Assembly (NCBI RefSeq): GCF_964194025.1
Contig: NC_134469.1
Location: 58,838,001 to 58,902,000, forward strand
DNA: 64,000 bases
Origin: Convolutriloba macropyga
Taxonomy: Eukaryota
Reading direction: 5' to 3'
Part shown: positions 26,928 through 53,777 of the stretch, in pieces
Numbering within the stretch: the stretch's first letter is position 1
Layout of the letters: each line of letters begins with the position of its first letter
Position numbers and translations under genes: made by a program
Notes under the pieces: generated by a model
Databases searched by the model: none
The model's input: only the letters and a program-made list of their open reading frames with translations
What the model was told of the DNA's origin: nothing

Positions 26928-27680
26928 TCATCCTAGCATATCTCTCTTTCTGCCACGTGCTCTAACTTCGTCCAATTTAGTTTTTGTTGAACCACCAAAT
27001 TTGGACACTGCAACATAGCTTTCCAAAAACGATTGAAAAAATGACGTCATGTTTGCGTGCGTTGTGAGAATTGCACGTTCTAGAACATACAAATCAACAG
27101 CTTTATCTTCGCTCGAATCCGATCCAGAGGACAGGCCAAAATCAATCGGTACAATCGAGAACTTCTCTGAATGATTTTCTCCGTTCATTACAACTTCAGC
27201 TTCAGGCAATGGTAAGTTTTCAGCAATTTGTTTGACTAAAAGGTTAGAGGTTGTCAAGTCACCGTGAATTACACCTGCATCGTGCATTTTGGCAATTAGT
27301 CTGGCGACATGTAACGATAGCACTTTCAGATCGGAATCCTGGTAAGCTTGCAATTCTAAAAAACAACGCAAACTCTGATAATCATTCAGATATTCCATGA
27401 GAATGACGCGTTCATGCAAGTCAGTCAAGTATACAATAGGCACTTTGATTCCTAGACGTTGACACTTCAGCAGAGTCCTTCCTTCCTGAGTGATACGCTT
27501 CGTTGTCAATTTCTTGTCCAGCTCAGCGTGACGGTATTGTTTCAACAGACGCTTCTTAAGTAAAAACTGACCGTTCGGCAATATGTTGTTGGGGTCTTTC
27601 AGAATGTAAAGACAGGCCTCCGCACCTTGAAAGAGAAGCGAATGCTCGCAATTTTTCAGGAATGGACAATCATCAACCAT
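26928..27680 (-). CDS. TP53RK: TP53-regulating kinase / Bud32 (KEOPS complex), intronless, 250 aa
   Basis: Motifs LLFQGAEA, KQYRHAELDKKLTTKRITQEGR, VIHGDLTTSN, IDFGLS, EDKAVDLYVLERA and the C-terminal RARGRKRDMLG. Confidence 0.97.
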   Translation of the reverse strand: MVDDCPFLKNCEHSLLFQGAEACLYILKDPNNILPNGQFLLKKRLLKQYRHAELDKKLTTKRITQEGRTLLKCQRLGIKVPIVYLTDLHERVILMEYLNDYQSLRCFLELQAYQDSDLKVLSLHVARLIAKMHDAGVIHGDLTTSNLLVKQIAENLPLPEAEVVMNGENHSEKFSIVPIDFGLSSGSDSSEDKAVDLYVLERAILTTHANMTSFFQSFLESYVAVSKFGGSTKTKLDEVRARGRKRDMLG

Positions 27681-27687
27681 TGCTTAT

Positions 27688-27697
27688 CTGAAAGAAT
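27688..27697 (-). promoter_or_regulatory. Unpaired 3' splice acceptor (TTCTTTCAG) 7 nt upstream of the TP53RK ATG; candidate trans-splice site
   Basis: Minus strand cgattctttcag|ataagcaATG; no strong donor in the 165-nt spacer from NDUFA2. Confidence 0.6.
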
Positions 27698-27845
27698 CGA
27701 GTTGCAGCGAGCATTTTCATTACAGGTTTCAAAAAATAAATGCCATTGCTCAACACTAAGATACTACGCTCAGTTCTAGGATACTGTGATCAGTTATTTA
27801 ACAATTCAATACAAGAGCAATTTTAATTTCCGAAAAAAAGTTTTG

Positions 27846-28462
27846 TTATATTTTTTTGGCTAAGTTTTGGATGCTGCTGAGAACTTGATTCGAATTCATA
27901 TCTGTGAGCTCCACTGACCTCTCAACACCCAAATCTAAAACAGCAACATCATCCTTTGGAGAATGGGAGAAGGAGTCTGTCAGAGACAATGGGAAATCAA
28001 ATTATGAACAAAGCCCTTCCTTTGCTTATTTAATGTTAATGGTTTTCAGCATAGTTCCACTTGAAAAGTATTCTTTTCAGGCGCCATCAACAAAGAATCA
28101 AGAGGTTAAATTTCGCACAAACAACCAACAACAATTACAACCCTGATTCAAAATAGCTTTGTTCTCCCTCTACTTTCAGAACGGCTCCCGGGGATTCGAA
28201 AGTTCAATCAGTAACTAGTATTTAACAGGACTAAAAATCCAGCTACCAACTCACTGTATCGAGCATAAACTCTGGGCACGACCCCACTGCACTCTCTGAC
28301 CATGATTGGCATGTGGGGGTTGGCTACTTTGAGAGGAACGTAATGCTGTTCAATGAAGTTTCTCACTCCGGCACTCGAGGAGCTCGTTTGGCACAGGTGC
28401 AGCCGGAACTCCTTCACATTGTTACCCAGACTACGAGCTGCCTGTTTCACTGCTCCGCTCAT
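27846..28462 (-). CDS. NDUFA2: NADH:ubiquinone oxidoreductase subunit A2 (B8), 2 exons (28462-28255, 27934-27846), 98 aa
   Basis: MSGAVKQAARSLGNNVKEFRLHLCQTSSSSAGVRNFIEQHYVPLKVANPHMPIMVRECSGVVPRVYARY/NLGVERSVELTDMNSNQVLSSIQNLAKKI*. Intron gtgagt..gttttag; 208+89 = 297 nt. Confidence 0.95.
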
Positions 28463-28468
28463 TTTTGT

Positions 28469-28478
28469 CTGAAAAAGC
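28469..28478 (-). promoter_or_regulatory. Acceptor (GCTTTTTCAG) 6 nt upstream of the NDUFA2 ATG; candidate trans-splice site
   Basis: Minus strand ctgctttttcag|acaaaaATG. Confidence 0.55.
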
Positions 28479-30200
28479 AGGATATAGTTGTATTGTACAT
28501 TATAGGCCGCAACCGTAATCCGCGCATCGCTTGTAAATAGAAATCCATTATTTACATTTTCTTTCAAAATCATCATTAATTGAAACTTTAGTATAGGCAA
28601 CACACTAATTGTAAATTAAAACAGAAGTCACATAAAGATCCCAGTATGATTAAAGGCGGCCTTTTGCATCAATATTCAGGAAACTTTTCAAATGATGTAG
28701 CCAATTTGGTCCCATTTTGATCTTTTTCAGCTGTTATCTGTCAATTTTAGCCCAAGTTTCAGTTTCTTCTAGTTACAAATTCTATATAACCACCATTTGC
28801 GAAAAATTTGTCCGCACTTTAAAGAATTTAAAGAAGTCATTAGCTATTTGATTGTGACGAGAGTGCCGGAGTTAAGACCATTCATTTGTTTAAATGTTTG
28901 TCTGGATGAAAATTGCTAGTGCTTTCAAAATGATGCGCTTCACGAGATTTTCTCCCTTTGTAGAATTGGTTTTTATGTGGGGGACCGAATTTACATGGGA
29001 ATAAGGCATGATTCCTAGTTCCTCTGAAATACCAATTCCTAGCTGGTTAAAAGTTTCGTTTCCAGCTGAAAATGGTGTAATTCATGCTTAAGTGGAGCTG
29101 ACAATATAAGTGCTTAAATAGCACTTTACTGATAACCTTGAAACAGTATAATGTTCTAAGGTTCAACTTAAAAAAATGGCTTGGAGTGAACAAATTTAAG
29201 AAATCACCACTCGAATGAAATTTAAATCAAATGCCTCGACATCGGTTTTCTTTTATTTCGGATGCCATACTAATAAAACCAGATGAAGAAACCTTGTGTA
29301 AACCAAAGATTGAGAGGCAGTCTAACAAGTATACAGACGTTAATCTATACAACAGACAGGAAACATTGGGATCAATATGGCACAGTAAAATGAGTTTCCT
29401 AAATTAGAAATCCATTTCTGACAACAAATATAGAACTATTATTTATTCAATACAAAATTTCATATCCGAAAAACAGCCATATTTCTCAAAAATATTGAAT
29501 TTCGATACGAGCAATTTAAATGTCTGTATGAATGTCTTCTTAAGGTGACAAGTGCTAAAAGCTTTTCCAATTGTTAGAATTATCAGCATTTTCTTTAAGA
29601 CAATACCAATTAGACGCATCCAAAAAATTGAAATCAGTACATTTGATTGCGTGGAATTTAAAGTATTGATTTACTTAAGTTTGCTGAGTAACGGATAGTT
29701 GATGCTCTGGGCAGGTTGAAGTAGAAGATCAAGGCCGTATCTGTCCTCATTAATAGTTACGTATTTTACAAAAAACAAAAAATCTTTCTTTTCATTAGGG
29801 GTCTGTAGGGGAAAAGAAATCATGTAGTTTCAAAACCGCATACAATTCTTCAATCTCTTACCTAATCAAGAACTTTTTGATTCTTACTAAAATCTCAAAA
29901 CAAATAAGGAGCTGTATAACAGAAATGATAAACAAAACTCTAAATCAATCTCTTCTGACCTGAATAGTCACAATTTAATAAAGCTTTCATGTTAGAAAAA
30001 TTGGGACTCCATTGGGAGTGACATTAAAATTGCATCGTTTTCATTTAATTTTTGTTAGATAAAATTTATGTTAAATCTGCTATAGAGTTCGCCTATGGCG
30101 GGTTTTCAAGCAATTCTAATTCAGTTGATCTGGGATGTAATTTAAATTTTTTTTGTTTTGAATTGACGAAGCTTAAATTTGGCATGTATAATTCTACAAA

Positions 30201-32644
30201 TTGGTTCCGACCCTCCTGAAGGGGGAACTATATACTCAACAGGTTTTTTCTGTTCAGACAATTTTGACCGATCGATATATTCATCGTGGAGATTGCGAGT
30301 GGTATCATTAAAAAGCCCATGCAGCGTAGAATATGGAATTGAAAAGATTTATTTGAATTTCGTTTTCTAGAGCGAGTTATCGTGATTTGAATTTTTGTGA
30401 ATATTAGACCGATTTGCATTATTTTTGTTCACATTTCCCGGAATTTTTGACTAAGGTTTTGTCAGTTTTGCTTAAAATATGTAAACTTTGTCAAATATAA
30501 AACTGTTGATTTTATTTTTAAAGACAAAAAAGTTGACTATTTTAATTTCTTTGGCCAAAATTTCGGCTAAATATTTCAAAATTCAGCCTTTTTTATCAAA
30601 AAATTGCCCGAAATAAGCTTCTTTAGTCCACTTTGATTAAATGTGCCCAAAGTACACACCCAAAATCAGTTAACACAATCTTTTAAATTAGTAAGAGTTA
30701 TTCCTACTTCCACTTCCATTGTGAGTAGTCTGGAATTCAAATTTTGCCGTTTTTCGCTAACTTTAATCTATGATTATTAAAAACGCAGAATTTATTTTTG
30801 ATCTCTAACTAACAAATCGCAAGGCTAGTTTTCGTCCAATCATGGACTGTTACAATCCAAAAAATTGGATTGTAATCAGTCGGTCTTTTTTAGAAACTCG
30901 TTTTTTTATAAATAAAGAACAGAACAATTGAAATCAAAGCTCAACCTAGACAGGTCCAATTGGCTTGCTAAGAAGCTCCAAATAAATGCATCTAATTTTT
31001 ACTCGAAAGTTTGTAGTTGTTTTGACTTAAAAATATTTGATTTTTCAATAAACAATGGCTTTTTGAAGTTCGCCACTATTTTTCTCTTAATTTGGTCAAA
31101 TTGTAGCTTAATGTCAGCTAACAATGAATGCTACTTCTTCCCCTTCTTTCTACTGAATTAAAATTTAACTACTTTTGCGCGTTCAGCGATGGTTTTCTGG
31201 CTTTGATACTCAAATTGATACTCAAACTAGATTTCACAAATTTGTTTTTAATTTTTAGGCATTGGCCCAATTTTCATGTTTTCTTTTCTCGTTTTGTCAC
31301 ATTATCACACTATTGAAAGTTCACATATTACATTATTCGCTTTCAAAATAAAGCACAATTGAACGTTTAAAATCTTTAAAGGCATGGATTGTGATTTTAA
31401 CGGCTTCGACACCCCCTTATGGAAGAATTTAATTGAAAATATTTACATTTGTCAACTGTCGTTTTTAATTTGTCTTTTTAGTCTTATGAAATTTCCTGGA
31501 TTTCGGCAGGTCTCGTTAGCTTTTTTATGGAGGAAAAAATGAGCCTATATTCTAATTTGAATAGATAGCTGATGGCTTTCATGACTTTAAAAACAATTAA
31601 TTTCAAGAACGAAAAAAAATTAACTTTCGTTATTTTTTGTCTATTTGCTACCTGGTCTCATTTATAACAGGTCTCATTTAACATTATTGTCATCGAGGGA
31701 AAGTGCAAGTGTGAAAAATCTAATGTTTTTAAAGATTTCGTTATTAATTGACTGGCTTCGACACAGGTTTTTGCAAAAATTAAATTAACTTTGACTTTTG
31801 TCTAAAATTGACGCTCTTTTTGTTGACGTTATTTTTTTGTGAATAGTTGCAGGTCTCAAGCGCTTCTTTCGGACGAGTAAACGAACCTATTTAACCATTC
31901 TATTTTGTAGCTTATGGCTTTCATGACTTTGAAAATAGTTTTCGAAAAATACAAAAGTTCCTTAATTTTGCCCTTTTCTCTTTTTTCTCTACTTATTATC
32001 TATTCTCTATAAAGAGTGCTCGCATACGACCTTATTGGCGTTTAGGGAAAGCCTCAATTGAACAAATTTTGAATGGGCAAAGCATGCCTTTACGTCTCCG
32101 ACAGCGTTTTTTCGCGAGTTTCAATTTAATTTTTGTTTGTTGTCTAATTCTTGTTTTTTTAATGGCAAAAAAATTGAAAGAAGACAACTCTTAATGCCCA
32201 ACTATAGACGCATATCTGATTATAAACATCTTGGATATTTTCAATTGCTATCTAATGGTTATCATTAATTTGAAACTATTTGTTTTTAAAAAGTTTAAGC
32301 CAATTTTTTTTAACTTTGCTGTTTTTGTTCTTTTTTGTCTAAATGTTACCAAGCCTTATTCTGGAGTGGTCCCATATCTTTTCTAGTGGAGTACAACTTG
32401 TTTTGTTTAATTTCAGTTTTATCTGACGCTATTTTGACCTTGCTAGTAAGTTTTTTTAATGGACATAAAGTTTTGGATGTAATTAATGTTTGTTGTCAAT
32501 GTTGTTTGATTTTGTTGTTCGTCTTGACTTGCTTCAAACCGATTTTTTTTAAATACTTGAATTTTTGGGGGTTTTCTATCTGTTCATCATTCGGTAGACA
32601 TGCCAAAAATGCAGATGAGCGGAGTCGGAACTTCAGGTGCAAAC
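30201..32644 (-). mobile_element. Diverged HINE copy on the minus strand; its 5' hairpin is fused to the next (+) copy
   Basis: 3' terminus gttccgaccctcctgaagggggaactatatactcaac at 30204; 5' sub-TIR and hairpin arm gagcggagtcggaacttcaggtgc at 32617-32640. Confidence 0.8.
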
Positions 32645-35600
32645 GCACATTAAGTTCCGACCCCGCTCATATACATTTTTCACTTAATTGTCTACTAAAT
32701 GAGGAAGAGATAAAAAAAATTAACATATCAACATATCGTTCAACAAACTAATAAAAACAATCTACTCTACAGGGCCTAGGAGACCTGTGGCTACCATAAT
32801 ATGACTATCAGAAAAGACGGCAAAAAAATCAAAAACTTGTCCATTTTTTGAAAACCACTAATAACCAAAACAAAATAATCAGATAAAATTTATACTAAGA
32901 AGATTAACCCGTACTTTTTGGAACAAAATATGGGTCTTTTCCTCAAGGCAATTTGGCAACAAGTCGGCTAGAAATGAGCAAAAGCGGCAAAATTTTAATA
33001 AAACATTGCTTTTTTTTAATAAAAAGAACTAAATTCGAACTGATTAGAACATTACGCATCAAATGAAATCATTGAGAGAGTCTTTTATACCTCAATAGAG
33101 AGGGATTGAAGCCTTTCATTATCCAGGATATGTCAGACGACTACAAAAAGAACAACAAATACAGGCAAAAACGAAAAATTTGCAAAAAAAAATTATGCAC
33201 GAAAACGATGTCCCCCAATCAATTAAATATTAAGCTGATCACTAAAAACAATAAACATCTTCGTTTGCATTTTTTTGCAGGTGACAACGTTTGTAAGTCA
33301 AGAGACGCCCATTATTGTGATACTGTGAAAAGAAAACAAAAACCTACAAAGGGGCAAATTTGCAAAAATCACGAAAATTGGTTTTATGAAAACTGGTTGT
33401 TCCAAGAAGAAAGACCAATTGAGGAAAATAAAACCGTTATAAGGAGGAAATTGTATTTCAAAAGATAAACCAGGTGAATTGTATATAGAGATGCTTAGCT
33501 GAAATTTAACAGAAATAAAATTGGCATATCTCAAAAATCTATCTCTTTTTTAATTAAAAACAAATATTTTCAAAATTCATAGCCAACAAAAGCTTTCGAC
33601 TAAAAGAGTAGACAGTTTGACTTTTAATTAATCGGAAAAATAATTGCGACTGTTATTAATAAGACAAAATCATAAGACTATAAAATAACATTAAATACAA
33701 GCTGAACTAATAAGTTTCAAACAACGTTACGAAACCAGTTTTGAAGCCATTAAATTTATAAGATATTAACGGCGAGAACATAACATCTTCATTTGCGTCT
33801 CTTTTGATTATCATAACATCTTTTTGTAAAACGAATATCACAAAATGACAACAAAAAGAACCACAAAAACTGAAATGCATCTAATCTTCACAAAATTCTT
33901 CTGAAACAAATTGTCTAAGCCCAGGAGACATCATTTAAAAAGTTTAAACAACAAAAAGATTATTGTTTGATTCAACAAAACATTAAAAAGAGCTCTAAAT
34001 AATGAGACTAATTTACGAAAATGATACAAAATGGAAAAAATACGAAAAAAAAACGCAAACCAGAACAAAAAGGGATAAGTTGAAGAATACTATTACTCTT
34101 TTTTCTAGAAAATTACTTCGAAAGTCAAAACAGCCATTAGTTATTTACCGATATCAGTTATTTAAGTTCAATCGTTTATCTATAGTTGGCCATTGAGACT
34201 TTTATTTACACAATATTTCGCAAATGGCAACAAAAACTAACAACAGATACAGGGCAAAAGTAAATAAAAAACTTTATAAATTTCTGCAAGAGAACGGTGT
34301 CGCAGCCCATCAAACCATATGTTATGAAAACAAAAATTATGTTCAGTTTCAAATGCTGTAAAGCTTTTTTCAGTTAGATTATTAAATAATTTGACAATTT
34401 ACAAAAGAAACAAAAACAACAGCAAAAATAGGCAATTAAGCACAAAAATCAGAAAATTTTGTATGAAAACTCGTACTACCAAAAGCAAGAAAACCTTCTG
34501 ATAAAATAATCGGCCACAAAATTAGTTTTCACTCTATAAGGAGGAAAGGTTGACATGTACTCATTGAGAATAAGCAAAATGTTGACTAAAATAATATAAA
34601 AAATTGACAAGTTCAAAAAATCAGAAATTTCCTTGAAACAAATACATTCAATAACATAAGAGACATTAGGTAACAACCGAATGAATAGAAAAGGTTCATT
34701 TGCACCTCTTGAGGAAGAAATTTAGATCTTTGAGTGGTTAATCTTAAAGATCAGACTGCCAAAAGAGTAACAATTAAAGGCAAAAGACAAGAATTCAGTT
34801 AAATTTTACTAAAACTCTTCCTCAAAGCCATAAAAACCCTTTGGTTCTCTGAAAACAAACTTTATCTACATTCGGCCTCAAATTTAAGCAAATTGGAGCT
34901 GTCATTAACGGAGCCGTGATTTAAAAATATTGTCATTAAATGATATTAACAAAAGCAAAATATTTTGAAAAAGGCAGAATCGAAATAAAAACCAAAAAGT
35001 CTCTGATTCTAAGAGTCCATGATATTATCGAACCTCTCCCTCCTTTTGCCGCGCGCCCAGCAAACCGACCAAGTTTTCCAAGTATTTGCGAATTAGACCA
35101 ATTGTTGAGTGGAATTCTTAAATTAATAAAAAATGCATTTTGTATAATTATCGAGTTAATTCTGCAAAAAACGGCAAAGTTTTAATTTCAGAAGACCTTC
35201 ATGCGGCGCCTAAGAGTCCATGACATTATTGAACCTTTCCCTGATTTTGCCGCGCGCCCAGTAAACCGACCAAGTGTTCCAAGTATTTGCGAATTAGACC
35301 AATTTTTGAGTGGAATTCTTAAAATACTGAAAAAAAATGCATTTTGTATAATTATCGAGTTAAATCTGCAAAAAACGCCAAAGTTTTAATTCCGGAAGAC
35401 TTTCATGTGCCGCCTAAAAGTCCATGATAATATTGAACCTCTCCCTGATTTTGCCGCGCGCCCAGCAAACCGACCAAGCGTTCCAAGTATTTGCGAATCA
35501 GACCAAATGTTGAGTGGAAATCTTAAAATATTGAAAAAAAAATACATTTTGCATAATTATCGAGTTAAATCTGCAAAAATTGGCAAAAATTTTAATTCCA

Positions 35601-37297: not shown

Positions 37298-40200
37298 AAA
37301 CAAGGAGGCTCGGTAATGTGCGATCGCACATTAAGTTCCGACCCCGCTCATATACATTTTTCACTTAATTGTCTACTAAATGAGGAAGAGATGAAAAAAT
37401 TAACATATCAACATATCGTTCAACAAACTAATAAAAACAATCTACTCTACAGGGCCTAGGAGACCTGTGGCTACCATAATATGACTATCAGAAAAGACGG
37501 CAAAAAAATCAAAAACTTGTCCATTTTTTGAAAACCACTAATAACCAAAACAAAATAATCAGATAAAATTTATACTAAGAAGATTAACCCGTACTTTTTG
37601 GAACAAAATATGGGTCTTTTCCTCAAGGCAATTTGGCAACAAGTCGGCTAGAAATGAGCAAAAGCGGCAAAATTTTAATAAAACATTGCTTTTTTTTAAT
37701 AAAAAGAACTAAATTCGAACTGATTAGAACATTACGCATCAAATGAAATCATTGAGAGAGTCTTTTATACCTCAATAGAGAGGGACTGAAGCCTTTCATT
37801 ATCCAGGATATGTCAGACGACTACAAAAAGAACAACAAATACAGGCAAAAACGAAAAATTTGCAAAAAAAAATTATGCACGAAAACGATGTCCCCCAATC
37901 AATTAAATATTAAGCTGATCACTAAAAACAATAAACATCTTCGTTTGCATTTTTTTGCAGGTGACAACGTTTGTAAGTCAAGAGACGCCCATTATTGTGA
38001 TACTGTGAAAAGAAAACAAAAACCTACAAAGGGGCAAATTTGCAAAAATCACGAAAATTGGTTTTATGAAAACTGGTTGTTCCAAGAAGAAAGACCAATT
38101 GAGGAAAATAAAACCGTTATAAGGAGGAAATTGTATTTCAAAAGATAAACCAGGTGAATTGTATATAGAGATGCTTAGCTGAAATTTAACAGAAATAAAA
38201 TTGGCATATCTCAAAAATCTATCTCTTTTTTAATTAAAAACAAATATTTTCAAAATTCATAGCCAACAAAAGCTTTCGACTAAAAGAGTAGACAGTTTGA
38301 CTTTTAATTAATCGGAAAAATAATTGCGACTGTTATTAATAAGACAAAATCATAAGACTATAAAATAACATTAAATACAAGCTGAACTAATAAGTTTCAA
38401 ACAACGTTACGAAACCAGTTTTGAAGCCATTAAATTTATAAGATATTAACGGCGAGAACATAACATCTTCATTTGCGTCTCTTTTGATTATCATAACATC
38501 TTTTTGTAAAACGAATATCACAAAATGACAACAAAAAGAACCACAAAAACTGAAATGCATCTAATCTTCACAAAATTCTTCTGAAACAAATTGTCTAAGC
38601 CCAGGAGACATCATTTAAAAAGTTTAAACAACAAAAAGATTATTGTTTGATTCAACAAAACATTAAAAAGAGCTCTAAATAATGAGACTAATTTACGAAA
38701 ATGATACAAAATGGAAAAAATACGAAAAAAAAAACGCAAACCAGAACAAAAAGGGATAAGTTGAAGAATACTATTACTCTTTTTTCTAGAAAATTACTTC
38801 GAAAGTCAAAACAGCCATTAGTTATTTACCGATATCAGTTATTTAAGTTCAATCGTTTATCTATAGTTGGCCATTGAGACTTTTATTTACACAATATTTC
38901 GCAAATGGCAACAAAAACTAACAACAGATACAGGGCAAAAGTAAATAAAAAACTTTATAAATTTCTGCAAGAGAACGGTGTCGCAGCCCATCAAACCATA
39001 TGTTATGAAAACAAAAATTATGTTCAGTTTCAAATGCTGTAAAGCTTTTTTCAGTTAGATTATTAAATAATTTGACAATTTACAAAAGAAACAAAAACAA
39101 CAGCAAAAATAGGCAATTAAGCACAAAAATCAGAAAATTTTGTATGAAAACTCGTACTACCAAAAGCAAGAAAACCTTCTGATAAAATAATCGGCCACAA
39201 AATTAGTTTTCACTCTATAAGGAGGAAAGGTTGACATGTACTCATTGAGAATAAGCAAAATGTTGACTAAAATAATATAAAAAATTGACAAGTTCAAAAA
39301 ATCAGAAATTTCCTTGAAACAAATACATTCAATAACATAAGAGACATTAGGTAACAACCGAATGAACAGAAAAGGTTCATTTGCACCTCTTGAGGAAGAA
39401 ATTTAGATCTTTGAGTGGTTAATCTTAAAGATCAGACTGCCAAAAGAGTAACAATTAAAGGCAAAAGACAAGAATTCAGTTAAATTTTACTAAAACTCTT
39501 CCTCAAAGCCATAAAAACCCTTTGGTTCTCTGAAAACAAACTTTATCTACATTCGGCCTCAAATTTAAGCAAATTGGAGCTGTCATTAATGGAGCCGTGA
39601 TTTAAAAATATTGTCATTAAATGATATTAACAAAAGCAAAATATTTTGAAAAAGGCAGAATCGAAATAAAAACCAAAAAGTCTCTGATTCTAAGAGTCCA
39701 TGATATTATCGAACCTCTCCCTCCTTTTGCCGCGCGCCCAGCAAACCGACCAAGTTTTCCAAGTATTTGCGAATTAGACCAATTGTTGAGTGGAATTCTT
39801 AAATTAATAAAAAATGCATTTTGTATAATTATCGAGTTAATTCTGCAAAAAACGGCAAAGTTTTAATTTCAGAAGACCTTCATGCGGCGCCTAAGAGTCC
39901 ATGACATTATTGAACCTCTCCCTGATTTTGCCGCGCGCCCAGTAAACCGACCAAGTGTTCCAAGTATTTGCGAATTAGACCAATTTTTGAGTGGAATTCT
40001 TAAAATACTGAAAAAAAATGCATTTTGTATAATTATCGAGTTAAATCTGCAAAAAACGCCAAAGTTTTAATTCCGGAAGACTTTCATGTGCCGCCTAAAA
40101 GTCCATGATAATATTGAACCTCTCCCTGATTTTGCCGCGCGCCCAGCAAACCGACCAAGCGTTCCAAGTATTTGCGAATCAGACCAAATGTTGAGTGGAA

Positions 40201-41979: not shown

Positions 41980-44900
41980 AACAAGGAGGCTCGGTAATGT
42001 GCGATCGCACATTAAGTTCCGACCCCGCTCATATACATTTTTCACTTAATTGTCTACTAAATGAGGAAGAGATAAAAAAATTAACATATCAACATATCGT
42101 TCAACAAACTAATAAAAACAATCTACTCTACAGGGCCTAGGAGACCTGTGGCTACCATAATATGACTATCAGAAAAGACGGCAAAAAAATCAAAAACTTG
42201 TCCATTTTTTGAAAACCACTAATAACCAAAACAAAATAATCAGATAAAATTTATACTAAGAAGATTAACCCGTACTTTTTGGAACAAAATATGGGTCTTT
42301 TCCTCAAGGCAATTTGGCAACAAGTCGGCTAGAAATGAGCAAAAGCGGCAAAATTTTAATAAAACATTGCTTTTTTTTAATAAAAAGAACTAAATTCGAA
42401 CTGATTAGAACATTACGCATCAAATGAAATCATTGAGAGAGTCTTTTATACCTCAATAGAGAGGGACTGAAGCCTTTCATTATCCAGGATATGTCAGACG
42501 ACTACAAAAAGAACAACAAATACAGGCAAAAACGAAAAATTTGCAAAAAAAAATTATGCACGAAAACGATGTCCCCCAATCAATTAAATATTAAGCTGAT
42601 CACTAAAAACAATAAACATCTTCGTTTGCATTTTTTTGCAGGTGACAACGTTTGTAAGTCAAGAGACGCCCATTATTGTGATACTGTGAAAAGAAAACAA
42701 AAACCTACAAAGGGGCAAATTTGCAAAAATCACGAAAATTGGTTTTATGAAAACTGGTTGTTCCAAGAAGAAAGACCAATTGAGGAAAATAAAACCGTTA
42801 TAAGGAGGAAATTGTATTTCAAAAGATAAACCAGGTGAATTGTATATAGAGATGCTTAGCTGAAATTTAACAGAAATAAAATTGGCATATCTCAAAAATC
42901 TATCTCTTTTTTAATTAAAAACAAATATTTTCAAAATTCATAGCCAACAAAAGCTTTCGACTAAAAGAGTAGACAGTTTGACTTTTAATTAATCGGAAAA
43001 ATAATTGCGACTGTTATTAATAAGACAAAATCATAAGACTATAAAATAACATTAAATACAAGCTGAACTAATAAGTTTCAAACAACGTTACGAAACCAGT
43101 TTTGAAGCCATTAAATTTATAAGATATTAACGGCGAGAACATAACATCTTCATTTGCGTCTCTTTTGATTATCATAACATCTTTTTGTAAAACGAATATC
43201 ACAAAATGACAACAAAAAGAACCACAAAAACTGAAATGCATCTAATCTTCACAAAATTCTTCTGAAACAAATTGTCTAAGCCCAGGAGACATCATTTGAA
43301 AAGTTTAAACAAAAAGATTATTGTTTGATTCAACAAAACATTAAAAAGAGCTCTAAATAATGAGACTAATTTACGAAAATGATACAAAATGGAAAAAATA
43401 CGAAAAAAAAACGCAAACCAGAACAAAAAGGGATAAGTTGAAGAATACTATTACTCTTTTTTCTAGAAAATTACTTCGAAAGTCAAAACAGCCATTAGTT
43501 ATTTACCGATATCAGTTATTTAAGTTCAATCGTTTATCTATAGTTGGCCATTGAGACTTTTATTTACACAATATTTCGCAAATCGCAACAAAAACTAACA
43601 ACAGATACAGGGCAAAAGTAAATAAAAAACTTTATAAATTTCTGCAAGAGAACGGTGTCGCAGCCCATCAAACCATATGTTATGAAAACAAAAATTATGT
43701 TCAGTTTCAAATGCTGTAAAGCTTTTTTCAGTTAGATTATTAAATAATTTGACAATTTACAAAAGAAACAAAAACAACAGCAAAAATAGGCAATTAAGCA
43801 CAAAAATCAGAAAATTTTGTATGAAAACTCGTACTACCAAAAGCAAGAAAACCTTCTGATAAAATAATCGGCCACAAAATTAGTTTTCATTCTATAAGGA
43901 GGAAAGGTTGACATGTACTCATTGAGAATAAGCAAAATGTTGACTAAAATAATATAAAAAATTGACAAGTTCAAAAAATCAGAAATTTCCTTGAAACAAA
44001 TACATTCAATAACATAAGAGACATTAGGTAACAACCGAATGAATAGAAAAGGTTCATTTGCACCTCTTGAGGAAGAAATTTAGATCTTTGAGTGGTTAAT
44101 CTTAAAGATCAGACTGCCAAAAGAGTAACAATTAAAGGCAAAAGACAAGAATTCAGTTAAATTTTACTAAAACTCTTCCTCAAAGCCATAAAAACCCTTT
44201 GGTTCTCTGAAAACAAACTTTATCTACATTCGGCCTCAAATTTAAGCAAATTGGAGCTGTCATTAACGGAGCCGTGATTTAAAAATATTGTCATTAAATG
44301 ATATTAACAAAAGCAAAATATTTTGAAAAAGGCAGAATCGAAATAAAAACCAAAAAGTCTCTGATTCTAAGAGTCCATGATATTATCGAACCTCTCCCTC
44401 CTTTTGCCGCGCGCCCAGCAAACCGACCAAGTTTTCCAAGTATTTGCGAATTAGACCAATTGTTGAGTGGAATTCTTAAATTAATAAAAAATGCATTTTG
44501 TATAATTATCGAGTTAATTCTGCAAAAAACGGCAAAGTTTTAATTTCAGAAGACCTTCATGCGGCGCCTAAGAGTCCATGACATTATTGAACCTCTCCCT
44601 GATTTTGCCGCGCGCCCAGTAAACCGACCAAGTGTTCCAAGTATTTGCGAATTAGACCAATTTTTGAGTGAAATTCTTAAAATACTGAAAAAAAATGCAT
44701 TTTGTATAATTATCGAGTTAAATCTGCAAAAAACGCCAAAGTTTTAATTCCGGAAGACTTTCATGTGCCGCCTAAAAGTCCATGATAATATTGAACCTCT
44801 CCCTGATTTTGCCGCGCGCCCAGCAAACCGACCAAGCGTTCCAAGTATTTGCGAATCAGACCAAATGTTGAGTGGAAATCTTAAAATATTGAAAAAAAAA

Positions 44901-49193: not shown

Positions 49194-50849
49194 TCACACA
49201 AAGCATCCATTGACTTTCTTGGCATAGGAAAAGGTTATTGTTAATGTTCCAAAGTCAGGCGACGATTCTTTCCACTCTATTAAACAAGGAACATGTTGAG
49301 TTGTAATTGGGTGTCGTCCAACGACAACTTGCGAGGAAAAGAAGGAAGGCTTCAGCTTTTGGAATTTCACTTTTCCAGAAGCATCTGCGCTTTCATTCCC
49401 GTTTTCCCATGCCTGATTCTCGTTGTTAAGAGGCGAATCGCTTGGCAACTCTGCTTCCGATTCGTCGTCGAAACATCCCTGCATCATTCTCTCTATTTTC
49501 ATTTTGCTAACTTCTATTGCACCATCTTTAGCATCCATCATGAAAAACTTCTCTAAACTCAACTTTGGACCGTATTTCTCTCTCAAATGATCGTCAGTTA
49601 AAGTCATAAAATGGTTGAAGGTTCTCGAACCTAAAATCTCCCAATGCTTCTTTTTACCTCCCTTGTATCCACTGACGGTGACAGTGGGAGCAATCGGTTT
49701 CCACTCATTGCCAAACTTTCCGATTATTCTCCTCTCTAGAGCCAAAAATATAGATGTCGGAATATGAGTTTCAATTAAAGCCTGACCTATTTTCGATTCT
49801 GTTAAGGGTTGCATAGCTTCGCGCATTAAATGAATCAAATTGCAAATGTAAAGATCAGGTGAGATCGGTATACTTGCCAAAACATTTTTGCCTATATTGA
49901 GCTCTTCTGAAGTTTCAGTTTCAAAACTTGGTTCACAGTGAATTTCTTTCAATTGTTTGTTCTCCTCCTCTTGTTCTTGAGACCAGACTTCTGTCGCATC
50001 TCCCCGGGCCTCCGCTTCCACTACATCTTGCAAGAACAGGTGGCAAAATTTGGCAGTTACTTTGATTCTCTCTCGGCAGTTGAAATCTGATAGAAAAGCG
50101 GCTAACAGAAGATAAACATGGTAGCAGACTCGAATCTGACCACAGATATCATCGTAACAACTTGTGGTTCCCGATTCCAGGAATGACTCACACGAACAGT
50201 AATATTCCTTTTTAAACAAATTGAATGAAACGAAAGATACTCCGTGAGGTTCTGTCGTAGATTTTGGACCAAACACTGCGTAAGTGGATCTGTCAATCTT
50301 TTGCACTGGTTGTGCAGAAAAATTAAAGCCAGCAGACAGCTTTTTGGCGGTGGTTAAATTGATAATTATGGATTCCGGAATTGAGGGTATTTTAGAGAAA
50401 ATGTACTCCCAGTGCAATGCAAGACATTTCGATTGCGCTGGTTTACCTTGTGCACATGAAGGCCCATGCTGACATGTTACAGGACCATTTTGTGCCGATC
50501 TCTTTGCCATACATGATGATAAGTAACAAAACACTTTAAACATGGGCACTTCGGCCCCATTGAATACATCTTGCTCCAACACTACAATGCCATATACTTC
50601 TTTGGAATCGACTTCATCTGCTACCGCAAATATTCTCTGCGAGGTATTGCCACAACAGTTCTGAAGTTCGACAACTTGTCTTTTTTGACGCGCACTACTT
50701 ACATTAGTACTACTGGACGTGTTATCTAAAATCTCGTTAATTCGACACCTTTTACATGCTTTAGCACGCATTCCCATGTACTCTTCGCATCCTGTGTTTG
50801 AACAACGTTTCAAACCTCTCAGAGTCGCTTTTGAACCTAAATGGTCCAT
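49194..50849 (-). CDS. C2orf42: C2orf42-like protein (N-terminal zf-tcix-type zinc finger, central SWIM-like CxC..CxH), intronless, 551 aa
   Basis: The N-terminus LGSKATLRGLKRCSNTGCEEYMGMRAKACKRC matches the C2orf42 LGKATLRGIRKC..G.R..SCK pattern. Also YYCSCESF..CYHVY and a C-terminal LIEW..FGTLTITFSY. Confidence 0.82.
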   Translation of the reverse strand: MDHLGSKATLRGLKRCSNTGCEEYMGMRAKACKRCRINEILDNTSSSTNVSSARQKRQVVELQNCCGNTSQRIFAVADEVDSKEVYGIVVLEQDVFNGAEVPMFKVFCYLSSCMAKRSAQNGPVTCQHGPSCAQGKPAQSKCLALHWEYIFSKIPSIPESIIINLTTAKKLSAGFNFSAQPVQKIDRSTYAVFGPKSTTEPHGVSFVSFNLFKKEYYCSCESFLESGTTSCYDDICGQIRVCYHVYLLLAAFLSDFNCRERIKVTAKFCHLFLQDVVEAEARGDATEVWSQEQEEENKQLKEIHCEPSFETETSEELNIGKNVLASIPISPDLYICNLIHLMREAMQPLTESKIGQALIETHIPTSIFLALERRIIGKFGNEWKPIAPTVTVSGYKGGKKKHWEILGSRTFNHFMTLTDDHLREKYGPKLSLEKFFMMDAKDGAIEVSKMKIERMMQGCFDDESEAELPSDSPLNNENQAWENGNESADASGKVKFQKLKPSFFSSQVVVGRHPITTQHVPCLIEWKESSPDFGTLTITFSYAKKVNGCFV

Positions 50850-50877
50850 TGAGTTTTAGGGGCTAACTATGACCTAT

Positions 50878-50888
50878 CTGAAAGAGAC
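50878..50888 (-). promoter_or_regulatory. Unpaired acceptor (TCTCTTTTCAG) 28 nt upstream of the C2orf42-like ATG; candidate trans-splice site
   Basis: Lies only 52 nt downstream of the AP5B1 stop, with no usable donor in between. Confidence 0.65.
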
Positions 50889-50930
50889 GTGGAGCATAAT
50901 TTCAATTTCATGGGTAATTTTAAAAAGAAG

Positions 50931-53777
50931 CTAGCTGAAAAAGCTACGATTGAATGTGCGATACAGATTTTCCAAAGATATCAAGAAGCTAGTAAGGAAA
51001 GGGCAAAGCTCATTGTTTGATATGACACAATGAAATATGACAAAATCATGCTGATGGATAATTTGAATGAGTAAATGGCACTCGGGAGGCAGAAATATGC
51101 CTAGTGCTATTTTAGATTCATCTTTGCCACTATTTGAAGACTGTTCCTTCATTGGAATCAAACAATCTGCGTGTAATAGTCTCTGTAGAATAGTCTTCAA
51201 ATCATCAAACTTTCCTTGATGTTCAACGCTGTAAATGAGATCAGCGGCTGAATTGTCTGCAAATTGGATCTGATCCTTGAACAAATCCCAAAGACCTTGA
51301 AACAAGTCTGGTCTCAAAGACGGGGAACAATAAAAAGGTAAACAATAGTCGTGGAACCTAACTGGAATACTGCTAACAGGGGAAGAACATGTAGTCAGTT
51401 GTTCGTCAATAGCCACACAATTCAACTTCAGGTCAAACTCTTTAACTTCGTGGACCTCAGCCTCAACTTCCAAAATTTTAGACGACTCATTCGCTAAATA
51501 ATCCAAACTCAATTTTGTGGTCTCTGGTCGAATAGAAAGGCTCGTACCAATATCAACAGTAAACTCTAGCGCGTAAAATTCAGTGGTTTCTGATTCGAGA
51601 TTTATCGACGTTTCAAAAAGCAAATGAATTGTTTGAGGCTTCTCGGTGAAGTCTAGGTACTCATTTACATCTTGAATTCTGGAGAAGAAACGCTTCACAT
51701 TCTTTGACATCAGTTTGATGTCTTCAGAATAGTACTGATTAGGGGTACTTTTCAATACGCAAATTGTGTCTAAATCAAGTAACTCACGTTCCGCTTCATA
51801 TACAACGTTTGTTGCACCGAAGAATGTACTGTTATGAGCAGCAATAAACGTTTCGAACTGTGCCTTTGAAGGACGCACATCTCTTGGCACGCTTTGAAAA
51901 AAGTGTCCTAATTTTTTTGGCGCTACTGTTGATGATAGATTAAGGTACAAGGATGCATTATCTCTCACAGCCTCGTTTCTGAAGTTGCTGACCACATATT
52001 GTAGCAAGCATATCACTTCAGGACAATAATTCTCTCTTCTTTCGGATTCCAACACATTGTGGAAGATCTCGACCAACCCATTGCCTACGTCATTCGAACC
52101 CTGGTAACATACCTCCGATAACATCAATGACTTTTCGAGTAACTCAAGGAACCCATCCAAATCGGCACTCGATTTTGAAGCAACCAACGACATCAAAGGC
52201 AAGTAGTCTGCGAAAAATGGCAGGAATTGATCGAATGAGCAGTTAGCAATCGATTCACTGAACGAACTCAAACACGAATCAGGGAAACTACTCTCGGGAC
52301 GCAGCTTCCACATACTTTTCAACAACTGCGTTATTGGAAGACAAAGAAAGGAATGCTTCGCGCACAGGTCCAGTACTATAACCTTGATTGCAGACTCGCA
52401 AGAACCGTGATACATGAAAGCTTGCAGTAGCACTCGAAATACAGCATGATGCACAAAATTTATAGCCTGTCTGTCAATTTGCTTTGTAAAGAGTTTAAGT
52501 AAGCTGAAGAAGTGGTGGTTGATTCCACAGCTCTCAACCGTATATGTGATTTCAACAAATTTGCACACTTTCTCAAGCAGCACCGCATTTCGATCGGGCA
52601 ATCTTGGTTGAAGTGTGCTCTTGGCTACGTCCAATTTTCCAAGTTTACCAACCAGAGCAGCTAATTTTAGGTACCATATATTGCTGATGTAAGACCTAAA
52701 GTTCAATCTTGCACTTTTTTCAAAGTTGTCAAGCAATTTTTGTGCAATGCTGGAAGAATTCCTGATGCAATATTGGAAAATTAGAACAGCGACAAGATTC
52801 GCGGCTAGGGAGTCAAGTTTCGAGAGATGAGTCACTGTATCTGCTAAGAGTCCTCCATCGTCAAAGAAGCCATAAAACAATTTGACTTCACTTAAGTAAC
52901 TCAACATTTGCAGCTGGACGGGTGTCTCCAGTTGGAACCATTGCTCGAAGCATAGCTTGCATATAACATTGACATCTTCGTTGTGACTAGAATATTGTCC
53001 ATTCAAGTCAAAATAAGTGAAGAAGCTACTAGCAGTTCCACAATTGAAACCCTTCAGGTCTGCTTTTGAGCCTCTGAGTAAGACATAAGTAATTCGGCGC
53101 TGGGTAAACTCGGGCGATTTAACAATACGTTTCAAAAAATTTCTGACACCCAAAATCATAAGTAGATTCCATAATTGTTTGTTGGGTCCCAAATGCGTTT
53201 TATAATCCTCGTAAAGTACACTCAAGTATGGCACCAAACAGCCAGGAATCGCCCTTTCTAGTTCTAACAAACATTGCAACACGTTGTTTTCAACCGCGTG
53301 GCCAAGAGTTTGCTTCGAATCTTGCGTAAGAAATTTGATCAACGTCTGGATCAGTGGAACTTCAAGCTTTCTTTCGCAACCAACACTTTTCTGAGAACTT
53401 ACAGTTGCACTTCTACTCCGGTCCCCTTCTGTTACCTTGATTTCATCTTGAAAAGACGTAACAACTGTCGTACACGTAATTAAATAGGCCACTAAGACAG
53501 ATGGCTTAACCACATCCGAGTTTCTTATGAGACGCTTGATAATTAATGAGATGACTTTTTCAGCCTCATCCGGGCCAGAGAGAATATCAGTGCAATATTC
53601 CCCCAAGTACTCGACGAGTCGTATCCTGCCGAAGACTGTATTGTTATCTTTTCCACCATCCTCTTGAAGTAAATACTGTAGAATGTCATTCAATAAATCT
53701 TCTTGACGATAAACTTTGGATAGTACTGAGGGAAAACTGTGTCTAGAATTCAGAATTCTTTCATAATCAATCAGCAT
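50931..53777 (-). CDS. AP5B1: AP-5 complex subunit beta-1, intronless, 948 aa
   Basis: Long helical-solenoid ORF with LQCLLELERAIPG, VRDNASLYLNL and the C-terminal GIFLPPECHLLIQI; these resemble the conserved AP5B1 segments (CLxELE..PG; RD.A.LY..L; xLPP..LLL). Confidence 0.8.
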   Translation of the reverse strand: MLIDYERILNSRHSFPSVLSKVYRQEDLLNDILQYLLQEDGGKDNNTVFGRIRLVEYLGEYCTDILSGPDEAEKVISLIIKRLIRNSDVVKPSVLVAYLITCTTVVTSFQDEIKVTEGDRSRSATVSSQKSVGCERKLEVPLIQTLIKFLTQDSKQTLGHAVENNVLQCLLELERAIPGCLVPYLSVLYEDYKTHLGPNKQLWNLLMILGVRNFLKRIVKSPEFTQRRITYVLLRGSKADLKGFNCGTASSFFTYFDLNGQYSSHNEDVNVICKLCFEQWFQLETPVQLQMLSYLSEVKLFYGFFDDGGLLADTVTHLSKLDSLAANLVAVLIFQYCIRNSSSIAQKLLDNFEKSARLNFRSYISNIWYLKLAALVGKLGKLDVAKSTLQPRLPDRNAVLLEKVCKFVEITYTVESCGINHHFFSLLKLFTKQIDRQAINFVHHAVFRVLLQAFMYHGSCESAIKVIVLDLCAKHSFLCLPITQLLKSMWKLRPESSFPDSCLSSFSESIANCSFDQFLPFFADYLPLMSLVASKSSADLDGFLELLEKSLMLSEVCYQGSNDVGNGLVEIFHNVLESERRENYCPEVICLLQYVVSNFRNEAVRDNASLYLNLSSTVAPKKLGHFFQSVPRDVRPSKAQFETFIAAHNSTFFGATNVVYEAERELLDLDTICVLKSTPNQYYSEDIKLMSKNVKRFFSRIQDVNEYLDFTEKPQTIHLLFETSINLESETTEFYALEFTVDIGTSLSIRPETTKLSLDYLANESSKILEVEAEVHEVKEFDLKLNCVAIDEQLTTCSSPVSSIPVRFHDYCLPFYCSPSLRPDLFQGLWDLFKDQIQFADNSAADLIYSVEHQGKFDDLKTILQRLLHADCLIPMKEQSSNSGKDESKIALGIFLPPECHLLIQIIHQHDFVIFHCVISNNELCPFLTSFLISLENLYRTFNRSFFS

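What the first reader, a model, noticed from the sequence alone, without database searches (positions are those of the whole stretch)
27681..28478. NDUFA2-TP53RK: candidate trans-spliced operon
Only 165 nt separate the NDUFA2 stop and the TP53RK ATG on the same strand, although the surrounding intergenic DNA runs to tens of kb. Both ATGs have a pyrimidine-rich TTTCAG acceptor 6-7 nt upstream. The spacer has an ATTAAA ~20 nt after the stop and no strong donor. This is the layout of spliced-leader-resolved operons known from nematodes, tunicates and flatworms. Operon status here is inferred.
Basis: partly seen in the sequence, partly recalled or inferred. Interest (0 to 1): 0.7.

Follow-up and report, generated by a model that had tools for sequence, protein, structure and literature searches.

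The report
Candidate spliced-leader operon in an acoel
In the acoel worm Convolutriloba macropyga, a mitochondrial complex I gene (NDUFA2) and a kinase gene (TP53RK) lie 165 bases apart on one strand; TP53RK very probably receives the animal's shared RNA leader just before its start codon, so the pair looks like a two-gene operon, but a shared transcript has not been shown.

Summary
On the minus strand, NDUFA2 (two exons, 98 aa) stops at 27846. TP53RK (one exon, 250 aa) starts at 27680, 165 nt later. Each ATG has a TTTCAG acceptor 6-7 nt upstream.

- **Organism:** the genome is that of the acoel Convolutriloba macropyga.
- **Splicing machinery:** it carries at least 1,264 canonical spliced-leader (SL) RNA genes, in tandem arrays with 5S rRNA genes. 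Their leader is identical to the one published for the acoel Symsagittifera roscoffensis.
- **Leader on TP53RK:** metatranscriptome ORFs of TP53RK from close relatives (79-80% identity) begin with an in-frame translation of this leader, ending 7 nt before the true ATG. Sixteen unrelated ORFs carry the same prefix.
- **Conservation:** three other acoel contigs keep NDUFA2>TP53RK with spacers of 145-317 nt and the acceptor. The neighbouring same-strand gap (C2orf42-like>NDUFA2) ranges from 1.2 to 20.7 kb.

Trans-splicing of TP53RK is therefore well supported. Co-transcription is still inferred, because no RNA of this species could be reached: all four sequencing runs found were genomic DNA.

The scan has noted similar candidate operons elsewhere in this genome (21 notes). 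I found no published acoel operon in the papers library. I class this as a new member of a known kind, of moderate interest.

The parts
28469..28480 (-). Splice acceptor ctgctttttcag in front of NDUFA2 (CAG = 28471..28469); the exon would begin at 28468
   Evidence: Read. A T-rich CAG acceptor 6-12 nt before the NDUFA2 ATG is kept in L002, L003 and L004. Whether the leader or a cis exon is joined here was not tested.
28255..28468 (-). NDUFA2 exon 1: 6-nt 5'UTR (28468..28463), then CDS from ATG 28462, ending in phase 1 before donor GTGAGT (28254..28249)
   Evidence: Pfam PF05047 L51_S25_CI-B8, E 1.6e-13. 100% identical to P0121, NCBI LOC142334551 of Convolutriloba macropyga.
27935..28254 (-). 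NDUFA2 intron (320 nt), GTGAGT...gttttag
   Evidence: Only the acceptor at 27936..27935 gives the 98-aa protein P0121. The alternative acceptor at 27979..27977 would add 14 residues that P0121 and the relatives lack.
27846..27934 (-). NDUFA2 exon 2 CDS, stop TAA at 27848..27846
   Evidence: tblastn finds this exon in L002 (82% identity), L003 and L004; P0121.
27681..27845 (-). 165-nt spacer between the two genes. It must hold the NDUFA2 3'UTR and 3'-end signals and the TP53RK acceptor
   Evidence: The relatives have spacers of 317, 145 and 176 nt. Their sequence does not align apart from the acceptor and ATG.
27822..27827 (-). ATTAAA, candidate poly(A) signal of NDUFA2: 19 nt after the stop and 134 nt before the TP53RK acceptor
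   Evidence: The relatives have AATAAA or variant hexamers 93-142 nt before the acceptor. This is weak evidence in AT-rich DNA.
27688..27696 (-). Splice acceptor ttctttcag of TP53RK (CAG = 27690..27688), the predicted leader-addition site; the exon begins at 27687
   Evidence: Conserved 4-7 nt before the ATG in L002, L003 and L004. Orthologous metatranscriptome ORFs P0002, P0004 and P0007 carry the translated leader ending 7 nt before the ATG.
26928..27687 (-). TP53RK (Bud32/PRPK, KEOPS kinase): 7-nt 5'UTR with an in-frame TAA, then an intronless CDS 27680..26928, 250 aa
   Evidence: Pfam Kdo, RIO1 and Pkinase matches. 42-44% identical to proteins named TP53RK. Single copy in the genome.

Best explanation
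NDUFA2 and TP53RK form a two-gene operon resolved by spliced-leader trans-splicing. A promoter upstream of 28471 drives one primary transcript through both genes. NDUFA2 mRNA is cleaved and polyadenylated in the 165-nt spacer, probably directed by ATTAAA at 27827..27822. The TP53RK cistron is freed and capped when the acoel leader (...GCCTAATTGTTGTGATAAACTTATTAAATAG) is trans-spliced onto the acceptor ending at 27688, 7 nt before its ATG. Shown here: the anatomy, the SL RNA genes, the leader on orthologous TP53RK mRNAs of relatives, and the conserved tight spacing. Inferred: leader addition at this site in this species, co-transcription, and the absence of a promoter in the spacer.
For: (1) The organism is the acoel Convolutriloba macropyga. 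SL trans-splicing of 30.2% of genes is published for the related acoel Symsagittifera roscoffensis (PMC9911081).
(2) That leader occurs in G000 with 0 control matches. There are 1,264 exact copies of ...TTATTAAATAG|GT, mostly in tandem arrays on C9 at 23.1-23.7 Mb.
(3) Each such gene has a GTAAGT donor, a single-stranded Sm-like UUUUAUUUGA and a terminal hairpin (fold z = -3.65). Each alternates with a 5S rRNA gene.
(4) The TP53RK ORFs P0002, P0004 and P0007 (79-80% identity, marine metatranscriptome catalogue) start MG-AFSLIVVINLLN-R-xx-M. AFSLIVVINLLN is the exact in-frame translation of gcttttaGCCTAATTG...AAATAG.
(5) Sixteen unrelated ORFs carry the same prefix followed by R, two residues and M. 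It is therefore the leader, not part of the kinase.
(6) Dispersed genomic copies show the leader joined exactly after TTTCAG (L055 against L005, L060 against L006).
(7) NDUFA2>TP53RK is kept on one strand in three other acoel contigs with spacers of 317, 145 and 176 nt and the acceptor 4-5 nt before the ATG.
(8) In the same block the C2orf42-like>NDUFA2 gap is 1.2, 3.6, 8.9 and 20.7 kb, and TP53RK>UCK is 4.7 to 21 kb.
(9) UCK, which is far from its neighbours, has no acceptor before its ATG.
(10) There is no donor in the spacer.
(11) A spacing of 165 nt meets the '<250 bp plus leader' operon criterion used for chaetognaths (PMC12460157).
Against: No RNA of this species was available. All four runs that hold the stretch are genomic DNA, with contigs running through the intron and the spacer. 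So neither leader addition at 27688 or 28469 nor a two-gene precursor has been seen here. Leader-spliced genes are often monocistronic; 30% of S. roscoffensis genes are spliced and no operon is reported for that species. A compact promoter could fit in 145-317 nt. Five genes are collinear in this block across species, so adjacency alone is not special; only the spacing is. Spacers and the NDUFA2 upstream regions are too diverged to show or exclude a promoter. No retrocopy of either gene exists to serve as a fossil of its mRNA.
Confidence: 0.65

Rival explanations
1. These are two separate transcription units. TP53RK has its own compact promoter inside the spacer or the NDUFA2 3' region, and its short 5' outron is replaced by the leader. 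The genes are close but are not co-transcribed.
For: Leader addition does not require an operon: 30.2% of S. roscoffensis genes are spliced and no operons are reported. The spacer reaches 317 nt in L002. Gene order in the whole five-gene block is conserved anyway.
Against: The genome is 1.18 Gb with 20-kb intergenic gaps, so nothing forces compaction. Even so, this spacer stays at 145-317 nt in four species while neighbouring gaps swell 17-fold. The spacer must also hold the NDUFA2 3'UTR and poly(A) site. No conserved block is seen in it.
Confidence: 0.25
2. The acceptors serve cis-splicing. A shared or gene-specific upstream non-coding exon is spliced to 28468 or 27687. Alternatively, a mature dicistronic mRNA is translated by reinitiation without any leader.
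For: Both acceptors are ordinary 3' splice sites. About 1.66 kb of single-copy DNA lies upstream of NDUFA2 before high-copy repeats begin at about 30131, and it could hold a 5' exon. The NDUFA2 acceptor was not tested for the leader.
Against: Orthologous TP53RK mRNAs begin with the leader, not a gene-specific exon. There is no donor in the spacer. The geometry of 6-7 nt from acceptor to ATG matches the 7 nt seen in the 19 leader-bearing ORFs.
Confidence: 0.07
3. This is a chance juxtaposition with no regulatory meaning. An intronless TP53RK copy landed behind NDUFA2 in an ancestor and simply stayed there.
For: TP53RK is intronless in all four species, and the genome holds hundreds of leader-bearing retrocopies.
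Against: No leader remnant lies upstream of TP53RK. The acceptor is conserved while the rest of the spacer is not. The spacer resists the insertions that fill neighbouring gaps. This origin would also be compatible with a present-day operon.
Confidence: 0.03

Closest known systems
Spliced-leader-resolved operons of nematodes (C. elegans), tunicates (Ciona, Oikopleura), flatworms (Schistosoma) and chaetognaths (Paraspadella gotoi, PMC12460157)
   Same: Functionally unrelated housekeeping genes lie on one strand. The spacer is about 100-300 nt. A poly(A)-signal hexamer lies about 100-130 nt before a UUUCAG acceptor. The ATG follows a few nt after the acceptor. The SL RNA genes are linked to 5S rDNA. 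A single leader type is seen, as in tunicates and Schistosoma (stated from general knowledge).
   Different: The host phylum is Xenacoelomorpha (Acoela), for which I found no published operon. The genome is very large and rich in repeats, so this operon is a tight island among 20-kb gaps and is not part of a compact genome. The polycistronic precursor is not shown. No operon-specific second leader is known, nor was one looked for.
SL trans-splicing in the acoel Symsagittifera roscoffensis (Martinez et al., G3 2023, PMC9911081)
   Same: The first 31 nt of the published leader are identical, and multiple SL RNA genes are present.
   Different: The paper reports a 32-nt leader ending in A, and reports no operons. 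In C. macropyga the exon ends ...ATAG before GTAAGT. The metatranscriptome ORFs indicate 7 more nt (GCTTTTA) at the 5' end.
Drosophila-type dicistronic genes (no leader; downstream ORF translated by reinitiation or internal entry)
   Same: Two ORFs lie on one strand with a short spacer.
   Different: Here the downstream ORF has a conserved 3' splice site, and its orthologous mRNA starts with a trans-spliced leader. The mature mRNA is therefore monocistronic.

Membership tests
SL-resolved metazoan operon | The organism has SL RNA genes and SL trans-splicing | tested here: met
   There are 1,264 exact SL-exon+GT copies, none in the reversed control. Donor, Sm-like site and hairpins are present. 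The genes form a tandem unit with 5S rRNA. The leader equals the experimentally derived S. roscoffensis leader. Dispersed copies show the leader joined at TTTCAG.
SL-resolved metazoan operon | Same-strand genes with a short intercistronic distance (<250 bp in PMC12460157) | tested here: met
   165 nt from stop to ATG and 158 nt from stop to acceptor.
SL-resolved metazoan operon | The downstream gene's mRNA carries the leader at an acceptor just upstream of its ATG (orthologues) | tested here: met
   P0002, P0004 and P0007 (79-80% identity) begin with the translated leader, which ends 7 nt before the ATG. The same prefix occurs on 16 unrelated ORFs.
SL-resolved metazoan operon | The leader is joined at 27687 (and 28468) in RNA of this species | not testable with these tools
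   The only runs that hold the stretch are genomic DNA. No transcript contig carries either protein.
SL-resolved metazoan operon | One polycistronic primary transcript, with no promoter in the spacer | not testable with these tools
   There are no RNA, CAGE or chromatin data. Spacer alignment is uninformative.
SL-resolved metazoan operon | 3'-end formation signal for the upstream gene inside the spacer | tested here: inconclusive
   ATTAAA lies 19 nt after the stop. The relatives have AATAAA or variant hexamers 93-142 nt before the acceptor. Such hexamers are common in AT-rich DNA.
SL-resolved metazoan operon | Linkage and spacing conserved beyond background synteny | tested here: met
   Spacers are 165, 317, 145 and 176 nt in four species, against 1.2-20.7 kb and 4.7-21 kb for the neighbouring co-oriented gaps.
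NDUFA2 (complex I subunit B8) | L51_S25_CI-B8 thioredoxin-like domain, about 100 aa, best named relatives are NDUFA2 | tested here: met
   PF05047, E 1.6e-13. 56-66% identity to named NDUFA2 proteins; the model is 98 aa.
TP53RK / Bud32 (KEOPS kinase) | Small atypical RIO/Kdo-like kinase domain, about 220-260 aa, best named relatives are TP53RK | tested here: met
   Kdo, RIO1 and Pkinase matches above their cut-offs. 42-44% identity over 94-98% of the length to proteins named EKC/KEOPS subunit TP53RK.

The most novel reading that the evidence does not exclude
Acoels (Xenacoelomorpha) have true SL-resolved operons that have been kept for long evolutionary spans. NDUFA2-TP53RK is one of them. Its intercistronic spacer is protected from the transposon insertions that have inflated every neighbouring gap in a 1.18-Gb genome. 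This would add a new animal phylum to the operon-bearing lineages. It would also give a natural system for asking what constrains intercistronic length.
Probability: 0.6. Interest if true: 0.6.

Novelty: new member of a known kind. Interest (0 to 1): 0.5.

Why it matters
Operons resolved by a spliced leader are known from a handful of animal lineages, and their origin is debated. Acoels sit at a contested, possibly very deep, position among bilaterians. Only leader trans-splicing, not operons, has been reported for them. A conserved tight gene pair whose downstream member demonstrably receives the leader in relatives is a concrete locus that can be tested directly, by RT-PCR or long-read RNA. 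In practical terms, automatic annotation and de novo transcriptomes of acoels may fuse or mis-start such genes. The public metatranscriptome catalogue already carries leader-derived false N-termini (MGAFSLIVVINLLNR...).

Tried and rejected
- **Read laying.** All four runs are genomic DNA, with contigs running through the intron and spacer, so they give no splice, leader or 3'-end evidence.
- **Exact-protein look-ups.** These returned only genomic contigs and no transcripts.
- **Retrocopies as mRNA fossils.** Both genes are single copy in G000.
- **Leader remnant in the window.** None within 3 mismatches.
- **JGI metagenome scan with the TP53RK alignment.** It found only relatives of 30-37% identity.
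- **The 49%-identical Logan protein P0010.** It sits on GC-rich (57%) contigs without NDUFA2, so it is unrelated.
- **Other Logan and ENA NDUFA2 hits.** None looks like an acoel protein.
- **Idea that acceptor exons start with A, because the published leader ends in A.** Among the first 100 of 406 non-gene leader copies the next base is about 40 A, 46 T and 14 C, so I dropped the idea.
- **Alignment of the spacers and of the NDUFA2 upstream regions.** They are too diverged to reveal or exclude a promoter.
- **Longer NDUFA2 exon-2 model (acceptor at 27979).** Rejected, because P0121 and the relatives fit the acceptor at 27936.
- **Handling of the spliced gene.** The spliced NDUFA2 model was searched exon by exon by reference.
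- **Masked stretch.** The run of N near 25.1-25.3 kb was left untouched.

Full report
**Observation.** Both genes lie on the minus strand.
- NDUFA2 has its ATG at 28462. Exon 1 runs to 28255, followed by a GTGAGT donor.
- After a 320-nt intron, the acceptor gttttag (27936..27935) opens exon 2 (27934..27846), with stop TAA at 27848..27846.
- This model gives 98 aa. Exon 1 is 100% identical to P0121 in the search, and the exon-2 residues match P0121 by eye. P0121 is the NCBI protein LOC142334551 of Convolutriloba macropyga.
- Exon 1 carries the L51_S25_CI-B8 domain (E 1.6e-13).
- TP53RK is a single 250-aa ORF, 27680..26928. It matches Kdo, RIO1 and Pkinase and is 42-44% identical to proteins named EKC/KEOPS subunit TP53RK.
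- The spacer is exactly 165 nt.
- TTTCAG ends 6 nt before the NDUFA2 ATG and 7 nt before the TP53RK ATG.
- The 7-nt TP53RK leader region contains an in-frame TAA, so that acceptor cannot join a coding exon.
- ATTAAA lies 19 nt after the stop, and the spacer has no GTRAG or GTAWG donor.
- Only 0.55% of ATGs in the window have TTTCAG 4-12 nt upstream.

**Organism and machinery.** The exact NDUFA2 match names the acoel Convolutriloba macropyga. The genome is 1.18 Gb.

Leader trans-splicing is published for one acoel, Symsagittifera roscoffensis. There the leader is GCCTAATTGTTGTGATAAACTTATTAAATAGA and 30.2% of genes are spliced; operons are not mentioned (PMC9911081).

That leader occurs in this genome 2,612 times within 3 mismatches, against 0 for the reversed control. 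The form ...TTATTAAATAG followed by GT occurs 1,264 times. Most copies lie in tandem arrays on contig C9 at 23.1-23.7 Mb, spaced 1.06-2 kb apart.

Each SL RNA gene has these features:
- a 31-nt exon as published, followed by a GTAAGT donor;
- a first stem that pairs the exon's 3' part with the intron;
- a single-stranded Sm-like UUUUAUUUGA;
- a terminal hairpin GCACUCUGCG...CGGAGUGC (fold -28.2 kcal/mol, z -3.65).

The genes alternate with 5S rRNA genes on the other strand, 1,257 nt apart. I recall this linkage as typical of other leader-using animals.

**Evidence that the leader is used in this lineage.** A further 406 exact leader copies are not followed by G and are scattered over all chromosomes. 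In the 30 copies inspected, the leader is fused to varied sequences, many of them repeated families. Two pairs, L055 against L005 and L060 against L006, differ only in whether the leader is joined before or exactly after a TTTCAG. This is what alternative trans-splice sites in retroposed mRNAs would leave. In 16 of the 30 copies an ATG lies within 12 nt of the junction, against 19% at random positions. However, several copies belong to the same families, so they are not independent.

**Leader on TP53RK mRNA.**
- Three TP53RK ORFs from the marine metatranscriptome catalogue (P0002, P0004, P0007; 79-80% identity) are the closest relatives outside the species.
- They begin MG-AFSLIVVINLLN-R-(C/F)E-M, and then continue with the kinase N-terminus.
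- AFSLIVVINLLN is the exact in-frame translation of gcttttaGCCTAATTGTTGTGATAAACTTATTAAATAG. That is the leader plus the 7 nt that precede it in the C9 genes.
- The leading MG fits an ATGGG at the end of a template-switch oligo. This is my inference: all 23 catalogue ORFs whose sequences I read start with MG.
- A search with residues 1-40 of P0004 returned 16 further ORFs with the identical prefix MGAFSLIVVINLLNR, then two variable residues, then M. Those with a Pfam family belong to unrelated families (phosphatase, zinc finger, oxidoreductase, Utp11, eIF3 subunit, PIG-S, thioesterase and others).
- The prefix is therefore the leader. The junction lies 7 nt before the TP53RK ATG in those relatives, the same distance as predicted here.

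**Conservation.** Three metagenome-assembled contigs carry TP53RK at 74, 69 and 67% identity (L002/L071, L003/L069, L004/L070).
- All keep NDUFA2 directly upstream on the same strand.
- The distances from stop to ATG are 317, 145 and 176 nt.
- A T-rich CAG acceptor lies 4-5 nt before the TP53RK ATG and 8-12 nt before the NDUFA2 ATG.
- The rest of the spacer does not align.

The whole block AP5B1 > C2orf42-like > NDUFA2 > TP53RK > UCK is co-oriented and largely collinear. Adjacency alone is therefore not informative, but the spacing is:

| Gap | Sizes across the species compared |
|---|---|
| C2orf42-like > NDUFA2 | 1.2, 3.6, 8.9 and 20.7 kb |
| TP53RK > UCK | 4.7, 6.3 and 21 kb |
| NDUFA2 > TP53RK | 145, 165, 176 and 317 nt |

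UCK, the isolated gene, has no acceptor before its ATG. AP5B1 > C2orf42-like is equally tight here (81 nt) and in L071 (68 nt). In L069, however, AP5B1 is not within 5.5 kb.

**What could not be shown.** The four sequencing runs that hold the stretch are genomic DNA. No transcript contig carries either protein. Neither gene has a retrocopy. The JGI metagenome scan gave only distant kinases. Three things therefore remain inferences: leader addition at 27687 in this species, any leader on NDUFA2, and above all a two-gene precursor.

**Interpretation.** The most likely reading is an SL-resolved two-gene operon (0.65).
- Leader addition to TP53RK alone I put at about 0.9.
- The main rival is an own compact promoter for TP53RK with a leader-spliced outron (0.25).
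- Cis-splicing or a leaderless dicistronic mRNA is unlikely for TP53RK, given the leader-bearing orthologous mRNAs (0.07).
- The locus meets the working criterion used for chaetognath operons: spacing under 250 bp plus a leader (PMC12460157).

**Novelty.**
- Full-text searches found no report of operons in acoels or Xenacoelomorpha.
- Leader trans-splicing itself is known in acoels.
- Within this scan the same pattern has already been noted many times on other DNA of this genome: 21 notes, several of them followed up. This pair is therefore one more instance of a genome-wide pattern.
- I treated those notes as leads only.
- New here: the leader-translated N-termini as direct evidence for this gene's orthologues, the SL-5S arrays, the longer (at least 38 nt) leader, and the contrast between fixed and inflated gaps.

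Noticed in passing
G000:C9:23.1-23.7 Mb (loci L026-L046, e.g. L035:1488-1590): There are giant tandem arrays of SL RNA genes alternating with 5S rRNA genes on the opposite strand (unit about 1,257 nt). The genome holds 1,264 exact SL-exon+GT copies.
   Followed up: partly
L035:1488-1525; proteins P0002, P0004, P0180-P0195: The acoel leader seems longer than published. The metatranscriptome ORFs translate 7 extra 5' nt (GCTTTTA) that also precede the leader in the genes. In C. macropyga the exon ends ...ATAG before GTAAGT, without the final A of the published 32-mer.
   Followed up: partly
Proteins P0002, P0004, P0007, P0180-P0195 (public catalogue): Public metatranscriptome ORFs carry false N-termini, MGAFSLIVVINLLNRxx, made of a probable template-switch oligo ATGGG plus the translated leader. 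All 19 show the true M exactly 7 nt after the junction.
   Followed up: yes
L005-L014, L049-L068 (G000, all chromosomes): 406 exact leader copies that are not SL genes are dispersed in the genome, fused to ORF-bearing repeated families (for example one starting MSQRGM...). These look like retroposed leader-spliced mRNAs or transposon transcripts. Some copies keep a TTTCAG between leader and ORF and others do not.
   Followed up: partly
window 49194-53777 (-); L071:1-3946: AP5B1 > C2orf42-like is a second tight pair: 81 nt here, with tctctttcag 28 nt before the ATG, and 68 nt in L071. In L069 no AP5B1 lies within 5.5 kb upstream, so this pair is not kept everywhere.
   Followed up: partly
window 1179-53777 (-); L069-L071: Five co-oriented genes (AP5B1, C2orf42-like, NDUFA2, TP53RK, UCK) are largely collinear in related acoels. 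The gaps between the tight pairs vary from 1.2 to 21 kb, apparently through repeat insertion.
   Followed up: partly
window 33106-33468, 37810-38148, 42491-42829 (+): A near-identical ORF of 112-120 aa (MSDDYKKNNKYRQKRK...) recurs three times about 4.7 kb apart. This is a tandem repeat filling part of the 20-kb gap between the C2orf42-like gene and NDUFA2.
   Followed up: no
window 30131-31500: Word depth in the genomic runs jumps from about 20-55 to 10^3-10^5, marking a very high-copy repeat. The single-copy DNA upstream of NDUFA2 is only about 1.66 kb (28471-30130).
   Followed up: no
L003:1990-2290: A long perfect inverted repeat (MITE-like) sits about 200-500 nt upstream of NDUFA2 in one relative and is absent from L004.
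   Followed up: no
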